Positions 14,750-25,790 of a DNA stretch of 45,468 nt are shown in pieces (positions within the stretch are counted from its first letter, which is position 1; the number at the start of each line of letters is the position of its first letter). A program made the position numbers and the translations under genes. The DNA comes from Lytechinus pictus. Taxonomy: Eukaryota. Location of the stretch: NCBI RefSeq assembly GCF_037042905.1, contig NC_087257.1, positions 24,012,533 through 24,058,000 of the forward strand. The letters run 5' to 3'. Under the pieces are notes generated by a model. It did no database searches and had not been told where the DNA came from. It saw only the letters and a program-made list of their open reading frames with translations.

Positions 14750-17360
14750 CCGAGAGACTGTAAAGACGTACAGCAGAGAGGTTCGACTTCGAGCGGAATG
14801 TACACGATTCAACCTGATCATAACGGCTGGCCCTTCCAAGTCTACTGTGATATGGTGACTGATGGCGGTGGTTGGACGGTAAGTACATTATTTACAGAAC
14901 GAAATAAAATTTCAAAAATAAATACATACTTATTTTTTCCATAATTACCAAATTCCATTAATTTTTGAAATCTTTCCCTACATTTTCCAATTCCTTTTAC
15001 TATCATTTTCCATCGTCCACTCGCTTACTTTGCATCTGGTTTGATTAACCTGTTTAATTTCTTTCTTCTCTATTTTCAATTTTCTTTAAATGAATTTATT
15101 TTCAGTGACATTCAATATTAATTGACTCTGTAAGACATCGGCCGTACATACCGTTATGTTCTTCATATCAACATTCCTGATGAGTGCTGAACAGTATTAT
15201 AACATCTTAATAAAGAATGCCTTTACAAAAGAACTCCAAAATCCCTTATTTGCTGTGCATAATTTTTATCTCTGTTTTATTATCACCTACCTATTTTCAA
15301 AAAAATATTTCACCCTCCAACTTGGGAGAAATGTTGAACTTTCAGGTAGTAATTCGATGGTTCATGCATGCAGTAACAGATCATATCGTCTACATGTAGC
15401 ACATTGGTCGATAGATGGTGCCATAACAAAATCATGCAATTCCTGGTTCATGCTTTCAGCCTTCTATTTTTTTTCTTATGAATGGAAATTATGTTGCTCA
15501 TTGTATCTGATATGGTCAAATTTTGAAGACTTGACACATCATCAAAGTATGAGAATGGGCAAAATATTTATATACTTTATTTGATTAGTTCTATAAAAAA
15601 AATCGGGTAGTTATAGATGCCGAGTACCTCCACATTTTTAAGAGTGTTTCGTAGGTTTATAATACTCTGATGACTGAAATGCAAACGATTTGGGGAAAAT
15701 TGAAAATTTTGAGGCAGGTTTTTTTCCCATCTATTTTGAATAATTCCATATGAATTGACTGGAGGCAAATAATACCTTTCGCACGAAATAAAATGTCACC
15801 GACAGTGAGTATGTAAGTCATCATGTGCATATTTCAAATTCACCTCGTGCTATCAATATCAATCACAAAGTAACTAGCCATAGGCCTACATGCCATAAAG
15901 GTCTACATGTAGTCTATAAGTGTCATCAGCAAGCTTGGAAAAGTTATACAGTCATGTGTAACACCTAAATGCATGTCATCCAATGGAGCGACTTCTATCA
16001 GCCGTTGACATGCTTCACTTTTTTTGTTACAGGTCTTCCAACGCCGTTCGAATGGTTCCGAACAGTTCCGACGCGGCTGGGCCAGCTATCGGAGGGGCTT
16101 CGGCTCAGCCGATGGCGAGTTCTGGCTCGGCCTTGATCGACTACATCGACTTACGTACCAAGACGAATACGAACTCAGGGTCGATATGTCCGACTTCGAC
16201 AACATCGCAGTGCATGCTGGGTATACATGGTTTAGGGTAGACGGCACAGCGTCAAATTATAGGCTACACGTTGGAGAATACAATGGAATCGCAGGTACAA
16301 AAACGCCAAGGGAGCCAATAAGGGGGTCTTCGTTTCCCACGACCCACGAAGGATTCAAGTACATAGAAAATGTATTGTTGATTTATGACAAAGAACAAAC
16401 AAGAATTCTTTGTCGAAAATTTGTAAATCAAAACAGCAGTTTCGTCCTGGATTCTGGACAAACAACATATTTGCAATTTTTCGTCACCTTCGAAACTTAG
16501 GACGAAATTTCCTGTTCCGGTTCACCAATTTCCGACAAACACCTCCCAGCTGTGCTATGTCATCTCGGGCATTTTCAATATATTTACTATGTTCTTGAAT
16601 TTGTCCCCGTTGCATTTGCGAAAATACCCCAATGATAAACAACCGATTACACCGTAGAAAATTTGGCGACGTGCACTTGTTGCCCAAATGGCAGAAGGAT
16701 TATCAGCCTTTTATGACCTACTATGTATCAGTTTCTTCATTCATAATATTTTCAGCCCTTATGATATTTATTTCATCAAGGGATCTCACAAAAAAGTTCC
16801 ACCTCATCTGACTGTTCTGGTTCTAGGGGTTATTCATTTACAATTGAATCAATTCTAAGGGTGGCAACCGCGTAAAACGTGCTCAAAGCTTCCTCAAGAG
16901 CTATGACTTAACCATAACAAGGGAAGTGTTTATAAACATCGCAATTGCATAACGTTTATTGTTCATAAATCTCTATTCGACTTCGAATTTTTAAAAGAAC
17001 TATTGATGATTAAAACCCCTAGACGTGCCAATTTCCCTTAAAAACTTCCTTGAAAACTCAGGTCCAACTTAACTTAGTATTCTCATTGATTGATTTTCAG
17101 GTGATGCACTGTCCTACCACGATGGTCAAGAGTTCAGCACGAACGACCGTGACCACGATTCGACCAATACGAGCCACTGCGCCAGAGACTCCGGCGAAGG
17201 AGGGTGGTGGTTTAATCGCTGCCTTGAGGCCAACCCGAACGGTCTCTACCTCGGAGGCCACACGGAAAGGACACGAGAGGGCATCGTGTGGACACCATGG
17301 AAAGGGGCGAATTACTCGTTGAAGACGATACAACTGAAATTGCGCCCAGTTGCAGATTAA
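14750..17360 (+). CDS. Fibrinogen-related domain (FReD; ficolin/MFAP4/angiopoietin-like) protein, 5' end missing at assembly gap
   Basis: Exons <14750-14878, 16033-16294, 17101-17360 give PRDC...[13 protein letters not shown]|VFQRR...[14 protein letters not shown]...|[20 protein letters not shown]...CA...GGWWFNRC...NPNGLY...YSLK...LRP. Canonical FReD motifs and an open frame; AATAAA near 17443. Confidence 0.9.
16322..16630. mobile_element. ~310-bp foldback MITE family, copy 1
   Basis: Long imperfect TIRs (GGATTCAAGTACATAG/CTATGTTCTTGAAT); internal sequence is the reverse complement of 18546-18854 and 21105-21325. Confidence 0.7.
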
Positions 17361-22669: not shown

Positions 22670-24910
22670 ATGGACCGGTTCGCAAGTCTCCTGGGCATCA
22701 TTGTGACCGTCTTCGTACTCGTACCGGTACAAGGCCACATATCATTCCAGTACTGCAGGCCGAAGTGCCCAGAGTGTCCACAGGCGGGTCTTATCCCCTT
22801 GGAGGATTGGCAACTGAGAGAGATCCAGAATGCCCAGAAGAGGGTCGCCGCTCTCAAGACCAACCGCAGCATGACTTATAGCAACACCAGGCCTATCGTT
22901 TCAGGCTTTACAACCAGTCAGGTAGGGAGTGCAATGATGCCCTTTCATAAATGCGGTCATCTGTACCGCGGTATTATTTGCCGGTTACTATACGGGTATC
23001 AGGATCTATGAATATTAACCTACCCTTTTTCCCAAACTGCTATAAAATTATCAAGGGCTCGATCTGCACGTTCAATATAAGATATCAAGAAAACGTTGCC
23101 ATGCCTCTGTCCACCGCTTGCCAACGAAGTTGTTTCACCCACATTTTACTTCGAAATAAATTAATATCATCCACTTTTATACACTAAAATGCTTCTAGGT
23201 TACCCTTACATGCATGAATTAAACTCACCCGTTATGCTTTTTTACGAGGTTAAAAAAAACTTCTGGAGTGCGAAAATACAGATTTGCAGATAATACTTGT
23301 ATTTTTTATGTTATATTTATATGTAATTTTCATATTTGATTATTTTCTAACAGAAGGAACGATTGAGGGAATTATTCGGCCAATACTTCAGCACAGACAA
23401 AACATCAGCTGACGAAGACTTCATGTTGTTTGACGAAACTAACCCAAGTAGTCGACGGCGAAAGCGCGACCCCGATGATCACCTGACTCGGGTCTGTCCG
23501 GTTATCCGAACTCCGAATGTTCTTGTGACAGTCTATGATGCGGATGGCAACGTCTTACAAGTGATTCAGGTGAGCTTTCAGATTTCAGTTTTCCATACAA
23601 TAATGCAAATTGAAAGGAAACAATATGTAAATATCATAGTTGATATAGTTTGAAGTTTATGTAGAATATCTTCCTAAAACATTTCAATAAATTAAAATAA
23701 CAGTTTACTAAAAAATGTTTAGGCATAGCCATATAACAGTTAATAAAGCCTTTTCTCTGTATTTGTTTTTCATCATAAGCATAGTTTGGTAGTAGGGTCG
23801 TCGATCAATGTTTTGGATGGGGGGTGAAAAAGAAAAATTCCGTAATTGTCAGTGCGCTCTGCGCACAAAATTATCATAGGCCCTACCGAACTTTTCGCCG
23901 TCAAGTTAACACTTGCGTTTATGTCATGTTAAATTATTGCATATATATTTCCACTGCATTTTAAGATATATATTAGCATATATTACATAGGTTATATAGA
24001 TTCGAATCAGTGATAGGTCAATACGTCATCACGTGACCATAGCTGCGAGGATCGCATTTGTTATATTCTAGGTTTTGACGTCACCTCAGGGAATATACTG
24101 CGTTGTATTGTCAATTGCGGCGTTATATTCACTAAGGTGACGTCACTCGCTGCATACAAGTTGCGTAACAAGGCAGTTTATCTGATGTACGCGCTAATGT
24201 TAACGCGTCGATTGCATGAAGAACGCGCTTGATGTATTTAAAAAAAAATATATATTATGACGTAGATGGATCAGAGCTGTAGCAAGAATTTCGGGTTTGA
24301 GCCAGATGATGAATGCGATTTCTGATGGCGAATCCACATAGACTATATAATATAACAGATATTGCCTAGCCTATCGTTGTAATAAATAACATTTCATCTC
24401 CCCTCCGAAGCTATATTTTTCCCTCGGGATAATATTTTCCCTCAGCGCTGCGCGCTTCGGGCAAAACATAATCCCTTGGGAAAAATATAACTCCGTCGGG
24501 GAGAGGAAATGTTATATTCAAACTCTAGGTAGGCAATATCTGTATAATATAGGCCTATTCGTGTCAGTTTTGGTAATGCTATACCGTCAGACAAGACATG
24601 ATTTCTCGACATAGAGATGTATACTAATACATCTCTATGTTACTCGATGATTTTTTTTATATAGTCTCCGTTAATAGAAAAACATCTTATTTTTCTTGAT
24701 GTATCTCAGGCCGACGGTCATACACAACCGGTGTTCCGTGACAGATGTGCAAGCCCTCTCTCACCGCATGTAATCTCAGCTTCATGTATGCCGACTGTAC
24801 GGTTTGCTTACATGATTGGCTTCCATGTCGATATGAACAACCAGCCAACGCATATCCAAGCTTATCGTATTCAGATCGAGTCCTGTACCTCGATCATGTC
24901 AACGGGATGA
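22670..24910 (+). CDS. Secreted precursor, 222 aa, with neurotrophin/Spaetzle-like C-terminal domain
   Basis: Exons 22670-22921, 23354-23569, 24710-24910, both introns phase 0 and GT-AG. Signal peptide MDRFASLLGIIVTVFVLVPVQG, then CRPKCPEC, furin-type site RRRKR, and a 100-aa mature region with 4 Cys. AATAAA at ~25120 and ~25144. The gene model is firm; the family assignment is by eye. Confidence 0.78.
24351..24549. mobile_element. Palindromic MITE in intron 2 of the secreted-protein gene
   Basis: ACAGATATTGCCTA...TAGGCAATATCTGT with extended imperfect arms around a GCGCTGCGCGC centre. Confidence 0.7.
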
Positions 24911-24924
24911 CCAAGGTTTACATA

Positions 24925-25090
24925 CACTGTAAAAAATGAAGTGCGAATTTAGCACTTACAGTGCTTGTATAGTGACTGCACTACGAGTGCTGATTTTTTA
25001 GTTCAAATTTAAACTAGAATATCAGCACTCGTAGTGCAGTCACTATACAAGCACTGTAAGTGCTAAAATAGCACTTCATTTTTTACAGTG
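24925..25090. mobile_element. 166-bp near-perfect palindromic MITE with TA flanks (Tc1/mariner-type TSD)
   Basis: TA-CACTGTAAAAAATGAAGTGC...GCACTTCATTTTTTACAGTG-TA; the arms pair over ~80 bp. Confidence 0.85.
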
Positions 25091-25421
25091 TAAGAAATAT
25101 GGACCAGACACAAAATATGAATAAAGTCCGACAGGCAGTGAAAAATAAACAATTAACATATTTATTTATTTATTTATCAATTAATTAATCAATTTATTTA
25201 TCTATCTATGTATTAAATTATTCATTTATCAAGACCTACATTATTTCGCTAGGGTCAGGATCACTTTCATCGTGGTCTTGATATTGCNNNNNNNNNNNNN
25301 NNNNNNNNNNNNNNNNNNNNNNNNNNNNNNNNNNNNNNNNNNNNNNNNNNNNNNNNNNNNNNNNNNNNNNNNNNNNNNNNNNNNNNNNNNNNNNNNNNNN
25401 NNNNNNNNNNNNNNNNNNNNN

Positions 25422-25432
25422 GAAAAAAGACA

Positions 25433-25464
<32 letters not shown>

Positions 25465-25575
25465 AAGAAAAAAGGGAGAGGAAATGAAAGAAAGAGAAAA
25501 ATGAGGAAAGATTATTAAAACAAGAAAAGAAAATAAAGAAAGTAAACAAACAAGAAAGAAAAAACACAGAAAAAC
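25422..25575. repeat. GAAA-type low-complexity tract next to gap 25288-25421
   Basis: Visible directly. Confidence 0.9.
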
Positions 25576-25633
25576 ACTCCAGAGGAGGTGTTTAATGCTG
25601 CAAAAACTGACCAAATAGTCGCAGTCGATTCAG

Positions 25634-25790
25634 GGGAGCGTTTCATGAAAGGACTTGTCGGACGTTTTATCCGACAAGTCCTATTTTATCCGACAGTTAC
25701 CATAGTAACAGTACCTCTCAGCCAATCAACATCAGAGAAAGATGTCAGATCTGACAACTTGTCGGATGAAAATGTTGATGAAACACTCCC
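25634..25790. mobile_element. Harbinger-like MITE
   Basis: TIR GGGAGCGTTTCAT/ATGAAACACTCCC with CAG TSD; core GACAGTTACCATAGTAACAG shared with ~6690-6930 and ~40450-40590. Confidence 0.75.

What the first reader, a model, noticed from the sequence alone, without database searches (positions are those of the whole stretch)
22670..24910. Secreted neurotrophin/Spaetzle-like ligand that has lost exactly the C3-C6 disulfide of the cystine knot
Seen: three exons give signal peptide + CxxxCxxC + prodomain + RRRKR + mature DPDDHLTRVCPVIRTPNVLVTVYDADGNVLQVIQADGHTQPVFRDRCASPLSPHVISASCMPTVRFAYMIGFHVDMNNQPTHIQAYRIQIESCTSIMSTG. Exon 3 is not in the ORF track in this frame. By eye it aligns with NGF: SVC~RVC, TATDIKGKEVMVL~TVYDADGNVLQVI, KQYFFETKC~TQPVFRDRC, SYCTTTHTFV~ASCMPTVRFA, IRIDTACVC~IQIESCTS. 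Known: neurotrophin/Spaetzle knots pair C1-C4, C2-C5 and C3-C6. Here C1, C2, C4 and C5 remain and both partners of the third bond are gone, a concerted loss suggesting a folded 'unknotted' variant rather than decay. An intron inside the mature domain differs from vertebrate neurotrophin genes. Inference: a possibly undescribed ligand family for Trk/p75- or Toll-type receptors.
Basis: partly seen in the sequence, partly recalled or inferred. Interest (0 to 1): 0.85.

Follow-up and report, generated by a model that had tools for sequence, protein, structure and literature searches.

The report
Four-cysteine Spätzle/neurotrophin-like sea urchin ligand
A real three-exon gene of the painted sea urchin encodes a secreted, protease-processed protein whose last 100 residues most resemble Spätzle/neurotrophin growth factors but carry too few cysteines to tie their knot; it evolves fast, has so far been found only in the genus Lytechinus, and is a variant of a known ligand type, not a new kind.

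Summary
Exons 22670-22921, 23354-23569 and 24710-24910 (+, GT-AG, phase 0) splice into a 222-aa protein identical to NCBI's "uncharacterized protein LOC135156459" of Lytechinus pictus. It has a signal peptide, a 100-aa prodomain with CxxxCxxC, an RRRKR site and a 100-aa end domain with 4 Cys.

No Pfam or PDB sequence hit is significant for this protein, and two AlphaFold runs failed (pLDDT 42-45). However, ESM-Atlas features and models put it and its L. variegatus orthologue nearest Spaetzle, then NGF, then IL-17. The orthologue also gives a sub-threshold Pfam Spaetzle hit (E 7e-4).

"Concerted loss of C3-C6" is not the history. The syntenic L. variegatus orthologue (78% identity) has 7 Cys in this domain. 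Both species lack C6, and L. pictus lost three further loop Cys, partly through an 18-bp deletion.

The gene evolves fast (dN/dS about 0.56). It was found only in Lytechinus and sits in a 37-kb tandem duplication. Exon 3 is about six times more diverged between the two copies than the rest of the block.

Knots lacking one disulfide are already described in invertebrate IL-17s. This scan also reported a similar four-Cys gene elsewhere in this genome. Expression, fold and receptor remain untested.

The parts
22670..22921 (+). Exon 1 (84 codons): start codon in a good context (accATGg), signal peptide, CxxxCxxC motif, first part of the prodomain. Donor is CAG|gtaggg.
   Evidence: identical to residues 1-84 of P0001
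22670..22735 (+). Signal peptide, residues 1-22, with likely cleavage after V-Q-G.
   Evidence: Hydrophobic core LLGIIVTVFVLVPV, Kyte-Doolittle 11-residue means up to 3.2. The cleavage site is inferred from the -3/-1 rule, not from a predictor.
22754..22777 (+). C29-x3-C33-x2-C36 motif at the start of the prodomain, invariant in all three copies.
22922..23353 (+). Intron 1 (phase 0, GT-AG).
   Evidence: same position in L. variegatus and in copy A
23354..23569 (+). Exon 2 (72 codons): rest of the prodomain, furin-type site, first 34 residues of the end domain (C1 and the first beta-hairpin).
23453..23467 (+). RRRKR (residues 118-122), a proprotein-convertase site. L. variegatus has RRRFKR at the same place.
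   Evidence: processing itself is inferred
23570..24709 (+). Intron 2 (phase 0, GT-AG), inside the end domain between Q156 and A157. It carries a 56-nt-arm inverted repeat at 24386-24515 and sequence absent from copy A.
24710..24910 (+). Exon 3 (66 codons plus stop): the remaining Cys (mature positions 47, 60, 93) and the second long beta-hairpin. It is the divergence hot spot between the two L. pictus copies.
25120..25149 (+). Two AATAAA motifs 210-235 nt after the stop codon, candidate polyadenylation signals.
   Evidence: motif only, no transcript data

Best explanation
The locus is an intact Lytechinus pictus gene (LOC135156459) for a secreted pro-protein. Residues 1-22 are a signal peptide. 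Residues 23-122 are a prodomain that opens with CxxxCxxC and ends in an RRRKR convertase site. Residues 123-222 are a 100-residue domain built of two long beta-hairpins, and it is a divergent member of the Spaetzle/neurotrophin branch of the cystine-knot cytokine superfamily. With only four Cys it can form at most two disulfides, most simply C1-C4 and C2-C5, so the ring-and-thread knot cannot exist. Its L. variegatus orthologue also lacks the C5-x-C6 pair. The inferred mechanism is cleavage by a furin-type convertase in the secretory pathway, release of the end domain as a (probably dimeric) ligand, and binding to an LRR-type receptor. A member of the expanded sea urchin Toll-like receptor family is somewhat more likely than Trk/p75, given the Spaetzle-like profile and the fast, loop-centred evolution. 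Shown here: gene structure, identity with the public model, orthology and synteny, Cys content, evolutionary rates, duplication. Inferred: fold, disulfide pairing, processing, dimerisation, receptor.
For: Gene model and identity to XP_063965091.1.

Orthologue P0003 in L. variegatus: 78% identity, same exon structure and same neighbours (fibrinogen-domain gene upstream, patatin/EF-hand gene downstream).

Constraint: pN 0.111 is below pS 0.186 (Fisher p 0.019). All indels are in frame. There is no stop in three copies. Runs of 22 and 18 invariant residues cover the predicted strands next to C1 and the last Cys, while the loops vary.

Superfamily: ESM-Atlas features 0.90 and 0.91 to Spaetzle clusters, with 187 and 196 shared features, and all ten best named hits in one clan. 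Atlas models (pTM 0.60-0.61) give TM 0.70-0.81 to a mollusc cluster partly annotated Spaetzle and to an unnamed echinoderm cluster. They give 0.55-0.67 to NGF/BDNF/NT-4 clusters, about 0.5 to IL-17 and 0.4 to PDGF.

Pfam Spaetzle, L. variegatus domain: E 6.5e-4 to 7.6e-4, spanning profile positions 17-92 of 96.

Both AlphaFold models, though poor, predict two long beta-hairpins flanked by the Cys.
Against: No family reaches Pfam's gathering score. The L. pictus proteins give no Spaetzle, NGF or IL-17 hit at all. A sub-threshold hit of similar size to an unrelated family (NPC1_MLD, E 0.004) shows the noise level. PDB sequence and profile searches find no cystine-knot chain. AlphaFold2 with 2-3 sequences gave pLDDT 42-45, and structure searches with those models returned nothing relevant, so the fold rests on ESM predictions only. 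dN/dS of 0.56 is high for a conserved signalling ligand. No homologue outside Lytechinus was found. No expression evidence was available. Which pair of knot Cys is missing (3/6 or 2/5) depends on an alignment that could not be verified.
Confidence: 0.6

Rival explanations
1. It is an invertebrate IL-17-type ligand of the 'T1C' kind, meaning a knot that has lost the Cys3-Cys6 disulfide, and it signals through IL-17 receptors rather than Toll or Trk.
For: PMC11087794 describes invertebrate IL-17s of types T1B and T1C that lost the 2/5 or the 3/6 disulfide while the other two bonds still tie the four strands. That is the pattern seen here. IL-17 clusters appear among the Atlas hits (0.85-0.86; TM about 0.5). 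Sea urchins have large, fast-evolving, tandemly arrayed IL-17 families (PMC5457136).
Against: There is no PF06083 hit at E<=10 for any copy. Spaetzle and NGF clusters rank above IL-17 by features and by TM in both species. Sea urchin IL-17s have eight conserved Cys. As far as I know they also lack a long furin-cleaved prodomain; that point is from my own knowledge and was not checked.
Confidence: 0.1
2. It is a young, lineage-specific duplicate of a Spaetzle/NT-like gene that is under relaxed constraint and losing its knot. On this view the product is decaying or functionless, not a working 'unknotted' ligand.
For: dN/dS is 0.56 overall and 0.58 in the end domain. Three loop Cys and six residues are lost relative to L. 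variegatus. No relatives were detected outside the genus. No expression data exist. There is a palindromic insertion 8 nt after the stop codon.
Against: The reading frame, both splice-site pairs, the signal peptide and the convertase site are intact in three copies and two species. All indels are multiples of three. pN is significantly below pS (p 0.019). The strands stay invariant while the loops change. Exon 3 diverges faster than the neighbouring introns, which decay alone does not predict.
Confidence: 0.15
3. It is not related to cystine-knot cytokines at all. It would be an orphan secreted pro-protein or pro-hormone whose resemblance to Spaetzle/NGF comes from composition and two beta-hairpins.
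For: Every sequence-based test is below threshold, and an unrelated family scores similarly. The first hairpin also gives weak RHS/YD-repeat hits (E 0.05-0.3). AlphaFold models are unconfident. The tool's own calibration says shuffled proteins reach Atlas feature scores of 0.9 in 4-10% of cases.
Against: Two orthologues that differ at 22% of positions give the same clan independently, with high shared-feature counts and TM up to 0.8 over 95 residues. The Pfam Spaetzle match is collinear over nearly the whole profile. The overall design (signal peptide, prodomain, polybasic site, about 100-aa C-terminal domain with Cys at the strand ends) is that of Spaetzle, neurotrophin and PTTH precursors.
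Confidence: 0.15

Closest known systems
Spaetzle family (Pfam PF16077; Drosophila Spz and Spz2-6, ligands of Toll receptors)
   Same: Signal peptide, cleavable prodomain and a C-terminal domain of about 100 aa made of two long beta-hairpins. It is the best family by ESM-Atlas features (0.90-0.91) and the only cystine-knot family hit in Pfam (L. variegatus orthologue, E 7e-4). The gene has several exons, with an intron inside the end domain.
   Different: Scores are below the family cut-off. There are four Cys (L. pictus), or seven with no C5-x-C6 pair (L. variegatus), instead of six knot Cys plus one interchain Cys. Cleavage is at a furin-type polybasic site rather than by a clip-domain protease cascade (the latter from general knowledge). 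The receptor is unknown.
Sp-NT2, the multi-exon, Spaetzle-like second neurotrophin of Strongylocentrotus purpuratus (Wilson 2009, PMC2772990)
   Same: A sea urchin NT/Spz-type precursor encoded by several exons, with Spaetzle-like features. It shows that such ligands are already known in echinoids.
   Different: Sp-NT2 is reported with all six knot Cys plus an extra Cys next to Cys V. Its sequence could not be fetched here, so orthology or paralogy with this gene is untested.
Invertebrate IL-17 ligands of types T1B/T1C, and vertebrate IL-17 (T2) (Huang et al. 2024, PMC11087794)
   Same: Members of the same superfamily that naturally lack one of the three knot disulfides. They are a precedent for working 'unknotted' ligands.
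   Different: No IL17 profile hit. IL-17 ranks below Spaetzle and NGF in feature and structure comparisons. A long prodomain with a convertase site is present here.
Vertebrate neurotrophins (NGF, BDNF, NT-3, NT-4; Pfam PF00243)
   Same: Furin-cleaved pro-protein with a C-terminal growth-factor domain of similar length. Atlas TM 0.55-0.61.
   Different: No significant sequence or profile match. Four Cys, not six. An intron splits the end domain. Evolution is fast rather than highly conserved.

Membership tests
Spaetzle (PF16077) | Profile match at or above Pfam's gathering score (27 bits) | tested here: not met
   L. pictus copies: no hit at E<=10. L. variegatus orthologue: 20.5-20.7 bits, E 6.5e-4 to 7.6e-4, profile positions 17-92 of 96.
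Spaetzle (PF16077) | Six knot cysteines (three intrachain disulfides), usually plus one interchain Cys | tested here: not met
   Four Cys in both L. pictus copies. Seven in L. variegatus, but only one in the last strand, so there is no C5-x-C6.
Spaetzle (PF16077) | Signal peptide, cleavable prodomain, C-terminal ligand domain of about 100 aa | tested here: met
   Residues 1-22, 23-122 (RRRKR at 118-122), 123-222. Conserved in the orthologue. Cleavage itself is inferred.
Spaetzle (PF16077) | Two-hairpin cystine-knot-cytokine fold | tested here: inconclusive
   ESM-Atlas models give TM 0.7-0.8 to a cluster partly annotated Spaetzle. My AlphaFold2 models had pLDDT 42-45, and their structure searches were uninformative.
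Spaetzle (PF16077) | Binds and activates a Toll-type receptor as a dimer | not testable with these tools
   Needs binding or signalling assays.
Neurotrophin (PF00243 NGF) | Profile or pairwise similarity to NGF-family sequences | tested here: not met
   No PF00243 hit. No NGF, BDNF or NT chain among PDB matches at E<=10 with either protein or with the profile. The only link is Atlas features 0.84-0.89 and TM 0.55-0.61.
Neurotrophin (PF00243 NGF) | Six conserved Cys paired 1-4, 2-5, 3-6 | tested here: not met
   Four Cys.
Neurotrophin (PF00243 NGF) | Furin-type cleavage between prodomain and mature domain | tested here: met
   RRRKR in L. pictus and RRRFKR in L. variegatus directly before the end domain. 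Motif only.
IL-17 (PF06083), T1C type | IL17 profile match | tested here: not met
   No hit at E<=10 in any copy.
IL-17 (PF06083), T1C type | Cys 1/4 and 2/5 kept, 3/6 lost | tested here: inconclusive
   The number and order of the Cys fit. The C47-C60 spacing of 13 would also fit a reading as C3-C4 (loss of 2/5). No verified alignment or structure was available to decide.
Cystine-knot growth-factor superfamily (structural definition) | A ring made by two disulfides, threaded by a third | tested here: not met
   Four Cys allow at most two disulfides in L. pictus. At best it is 'knot-less' in the way IL-17 is.

The most novel reading that the evidence does not exclude
The two L. pictus copies and the L. 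variegatus gene are a genus-specific, diversifying 'unknotted' Spaetzle-type cytokine that acts as an endogenous ligand for some of the roughly two hundred sea urchin Toll-like receptors. Its receptor-facing exon 3 is held apart between copies (or alleles) by diversifying or balancing selection, while gene conversion or recombination homogenises the rest of the 37-kb block. That would give echinoderm TLRs a first candidate protein ligand and a natural experiment on how this fold works without its knot.
Probability: 0.15. Interest if true: 0.75.

Novelty: new variant of a known kind. Interest (0 to 1): 0.45.

Why it matters
If the fold and processing are confirmed, this is a Spaetzle/neurotrophin-branch ligand that works with two disulfides instead of the defining three. 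So far that state is documented for IL-17s (PMC11087794). Sea urchins have a very large Toll-like receptor repertoire (PMC3367398), and as far as I know no endogenous ligand has been identified for it. A fast-evolving, duplicated Spaetzle-like gene next to a fibrinogen-domain gene is therefore a reasonable candidate to test. The comparison between species (7 Cys against 4 Cys in otherwise 78%-identical orthologues) offers a natural series for asking how much of the disulfide framework this fold needs. The significance is limited. The gene is already in public annotation, though unnamed. Related multi-exon NT/Spz-like genes are known in sea urchins. This scan already flagged a similar four-Cys gene elsewhere in the same genome. 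Nothing is yet known about expression.

Tried and rejected
1. Single exons as queries. Pfam and ESM Atlas gave nothing, because the pieces are too short. The exon-3 HMMER search of 1.84 billion representatives did recover the full public protein, which then served as the reference.
2. P0002, the only other hit of that search (E 1e-4). It is a 447-aa tandem-repeat ORF on a metagenome contig with no context, so I rejected it as chance.
3. Three word-indexed searches (whole protein, two-sequence profile, end domain only). They found only the L. pictus and L. variegatus proteins, so no deeper alignment could be built.
4. AlphaFold2 on the end domain of L. pictus (2 sequences) and L. variegatus (3 sequences). 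pLDDT was 42 and 45. Foldseek against PDB, Foldseek against AFDB Swiss-Prot and VIA-align wide gave only generic beta-sandwich or noise matches. This is uninformative, not negative evidence.
5. PDB sequence and profile searches found no cystine-knot chain.
6. RHS/YD-repeat reading of the YDADGNVLQVIQADGH hairpin. It rests on single sub-threshold matches (E 0.05-0.3) over 16-20 residues. I rejected it as a shared beta-hairpin motif.
7. NPC1 middle luminal domain (E 0.004 for copy A). It is sub-threshold and has no support from any other test, so I rejected it.
8. No paralogue was found inside the window by tblastn.
9. A literature search for the two LOC identifiers returned no paper.
10. Not done: any step that needed NGF, Spaetzle, Sp-NT2 or IL-17 sequences as input. 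No tool delivered them under an id and I did not type them.
Full report
**What is in the sequence.**
- The exons are 22670-22921, 23354-23569 and 24710-24910 on the + strand.
- Both introns have canonical GT-AG borders with polypyrimidine tracts, and both junctions are phase 0.
- The spliced CDS is 669 nt and encodes 222 aa with one terminal stop.
- Exon 3 lies in a 59-aa ORF, one residue under the default ORF cut-off.
- An HMMER search with the exon-3 peptide against 1.84 billion representatives returned a 222-aa protein identical over the whole spliced model. Its public name is "uncharacterized protein LOC135156459 [Lytechinus pictus]", XP_063965091.1, on chromosome record CM073238.1 of GCA_037042905.1.

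The genome is the painted sea urchin.

**Anatomy of the product.**
- Residues 1-22 have a charged start and a 14-residue hydrophobic core, and end in V-Q-G. This is a standard signal peptide; the cleavage position is inferred.
- Residues 23-122 are a prodomain that opens with C29-x3-C33-x2-C36. It carries an N-R-S sequon and a KR pair at 57-58, and ends in RRRKR (118-122).
- Residues 123-222 are the end domain, with Cys at mature positions 10, 47, 60 and 93.
- Both AlphaFold runs, although unconfident, place two long beta-hairpins in this domain. The first lies after C10. The second starts right after C60 and ends at C93.

**Relatives and gene history.** Three word-indexed searches of 5.8 billion proteins (whole protein, two-sequence profile, end domain only) and the exhaustive exon-3 search found only one other species. 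This is L. variegatus LOC121426895 (P0003, 233 aa, 78% identity).
- It is an orthologue. It has the same three exons and the same intron positions.
- It has the same neighbours: a fibrinogen-C-domain gene upstream and a patatin/EF-hand gene downstream.
- The cluster look-up showed a second L. pictus protein, LOC135156453 (P0004, 222 aa, 92% identity).
- That gene lies 36.85 kb upstream on the same chromosome, in a second copy of the same three-gene block.
- I could not decide whether this is a true tandem duplication or two haplotypes placed in tandem by the assembler.

**The cysteines.** Both L. pictus copies have the same four Cys and the same six-residue gap relative to L. variegatus. The L. 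variegatus end domain has seven Cys: the same four, plus three more in the loop between the second and third L. pictus Cys. Codon by codon, L. pictus has CAT and GCT where L. variegatus has TGT and TGC. The third extra Cys lies in the 18-bp indel.

Both species have a single Cys in the last strand (…I-E-S-C-T-S…). The C5-x-C6 pair that closes the ring of the knot is therefore absent from the whole known family.

Two conclusions follow.
- The protein cannot form a canonical cystine knot whichever alignment is right, because four Cys give at most two disulfides.
C6 is missing in both species, whereas C3 candidates exist in one. Without an outgroup I cannot say whether L. pictus lost them or L. 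variegatus gained them.

The 13-residue spacing between the second and third Cys would suit either C2…C4 with a shortened loop or C3…C4.

**Is it a Spaetzle/neurotrophin-type domain?**

Sequence tests are weak.
- The L. pictus proteins hit no cystine-knot family in Pfam even at E<=10.
- The L. variegatus end domain hits Spaetzle (PF16077) at E 6.5e-4 to 7.6e-4 and 20.5-20.7 bits, collinear over profile positions 17-92 of 96. That is below the 27-bit cut-off.
- A hit of similar size to an unrelated family (NPC1_MLD, E 0.004, copy A) shows the noise level.
- PDB sequence searches with either protein or with a three-sequence profile list no NGF, Spaetzle or IL-17 chain at E<=10.

My two AlphaFold2 runs had only two or three sequences and failed (pLDDT 42 and 45). 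Foldseek and VIA-align searches with those models returned noise. This says nothing either way.

The positive evidence comes from the ESM Atlas, which holds both proteins (pTM 0.60-0.61).
- By language-model features, the end domains of the two species independently land on Spaetzle clusters (0.90 and 0.91, with 187 and 196 of 256 features shared). NGF/Spaetzle, IL-17 and Noggin clusters follow.
- All ten best named hits are in one clan.
- By predicted structure they superpose at TM 0.70-0.81 on a mollusc cluster partly annotated Spaetzle and on an unnamed echinoderm cluster of about 200-aa proteins.
- They superpose at 0.55-0.67 on NGF, BDNF, NT-4 and arthropod NGF/Spaetzle clusters, at about 0.5 on IL-17, and at 0.4 on PDGF.

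Taken with the precursor design, I put membership of the Spaetzle/neurotrophin/IL-17 clan at about 0.8. Within that clan Spaetzle-like is the nearest label.

**Evolutionary rate.** Between species, dS is 0.21 and dN is 0.12, giving dN/dS of 0.56 (prodomain 0.41-0.46, end domain 0.55-0.58). pN is significantly below pS (0.111 against 0.186, Fisher p 0.019).
- All indels are in frame and no copy has a stop.
- The strands next to the first and last Cys are invariant over 22 and 18 residues, while the loops vary.

This is a constrained but fast-evolving gene. The pattern is more like an immune or reproductive protein than a conserved neurotrophic factor. At this rate an S. purpuratus orthologue could easily escape the searches I could run, so "Lytechinus only" is a detection limit and not a demonstrated range.

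**A divergence hot spot in exon 3.** Between the two L. pictus copies, exon 3 differs at 21 of 201 positions (10.4%).
- These comprise 12 amino-acid changes, several needing two or three nucleotide changes per codon, and 4 purely synonymous codons.
- Exons 1 and 2 differ at 8 of 468 positions. In 8.2 kb of the rest of the block, 1.8% of positions mismatch.
- The excess is highly significant (Fisher p 4e-10).
- Divergence falls off downstream: 5.6%, then 3.3%, then 0.5%.
- Polarised with L. variegatus, derived changes lie on both copies.
- Exon 3 is as different between the two L. pictus copies as between the two species (89.6% against 89.7% identity).

Synonymous sites are elevated too, so this is not simply positive selection on residues. 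It fits an old exon-3 split kept apart by selection, while recombination or gene conversion homogenised the flanks. An alternative is conversion of one exon 3 from an unseen paralogue. I could not discriminate between these.

**What is already known.**
- Wilson (2009, PMC2772990) described two neurotrophin types in S. purpuratus. One is the canonical single-exon Sp-NT. The other is a multi-exon, Spaetzle-like Sp-NT2 with the six knot Cys plus one next to Cys V.
- Huang et al. (2024, PMC11087794) classify invertebrate IL-17 knots into types that lack one disulfide (T1B without 2/5, T1C without 3/6, T2 without 1/4, T3 without Cys 5/6). Working "unknotted" members of this superfamily are therefore established.
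- Sea urchin IL-17s have eight conserved Cys (Buckley et al. 2017, PMC5457136) and do not resemble this protein in Pfam.
- No paper mentions either LOC identifier.
- This scan's own records hold a followed-up finding on another piece of the same genome, s1-294473. It describes a conserved sea urchin gene with a neurotrophin-like end domain and four of six knot Cys. A word look-up found no close similarity to my protein. It is thus a different locus of the same general kind. I did not test that claim.

**Most likely mechanism and verdict.** I read the locus as follows.
- It is a functional gene for a secreted pro-protein that is cut at RRRKR by a furin-type convertase.
- Cleavage releases a 100-residue, probably dimeric, Spaetzle/neurotrophin-type ligand held by two disulfides instead of a knot.
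- The gene evolves fast in its loops and is duplicated, or highly polymorphic, in L. pictus.
- A Toll-type receptor is my first guess, Trk/p75 the second and IL-17R the third. None of these is tested.

Confidence in this overall reading is about 0.6. The rivals are a T1C-type IL-17 (0.1), a relaxed or decaying lineage-specific duplicate (0.15), and an unrelated orphan secreted protein (0.15).

It is a new variant of a known kind and is moderately interesting. The most useful next facts are spliced transcripts, an outgroup orthologue, and a confident dimer model or disulfide map.

Noticed in passing
window 1-45468 with locus L004 (chromosome CM073238.1, 23,988,351-24,012,463): The block fibrinogen-C-domain gene, Spaetzle-like gene, patatin/EF-hand gene occurs twice in tandem with a 36.85-kb period. 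Non-coding identity between the copies is about 98%. The window starts inside the patatin gene of the upstream copy. With four N gaps in the window, a true segmental duplication and unpurged haplotypes cannot be told apart here.
   Followed up: partly
window 24536-25634, centred on exon 3 (24710-24910): Divergence between the two L. pictus copies peaks here. Exon 3 is 10.4% different (12 of 66 codons changed at the protein level), against 1.8% elsewhere in the block, and the difference decays downstream. Exon 3 differs as much between the two copies as between L. pictus and L. variegatus.
   Followed up: yes
window 24918-25097: A 180-nt palindrome (two 90-nt arms, 92% complementary, no spacer), MITE-like, starts 8 nt after the stop codon. 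It is absent from the upstream gene copy, so it is a recent insertion into the presumed 3' UTR.
   Followed up: partly
window 24386-24515 (intron 2): A second inverted repeat (56-nt arms, 82% complementary, 18-nt spacer) lies inside a stretch of intron 2 (about 23984-24535) that has no counterpart in the upstream copy. It is probably another small transposon.
   Followed up: no
window 23534-23569 and 24710-24721 (residues 145-160): The first hairpin reads like one bacterial/teneurin YD (RHS) repeat (Y-D-x-x-G-x-x-x-x-V…D-G-H) and gives weak hits to RHS_repeat, Tse15 and teneurin (E 0.05-0.3). I judged it a shared beta-hairpin motif, not homology.
   Followed up: partly
window about 14798-17360 (+): The upstream neighbour is a 200-aa fibrinogen-C-domain protein, conserved in this position in L. 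variegatus. Secreted fibrinogen-related proteins are often immune lectins in invertebrates, so the neighbourhood may be worth a look for co-regulation.
   Followed up: no
locus L003 5001-6344 (ENA metagenome contig ERZ25067868:ctg77528): A 447-aa ORF made of four tandem repeats of about 95 aa contains a stretch 47% identical to the last strand of the sea urchin protein (…IQAWRLQLSTCASVMS…). There was no context or family support, so I treated it as chance.
   Followed up: partly
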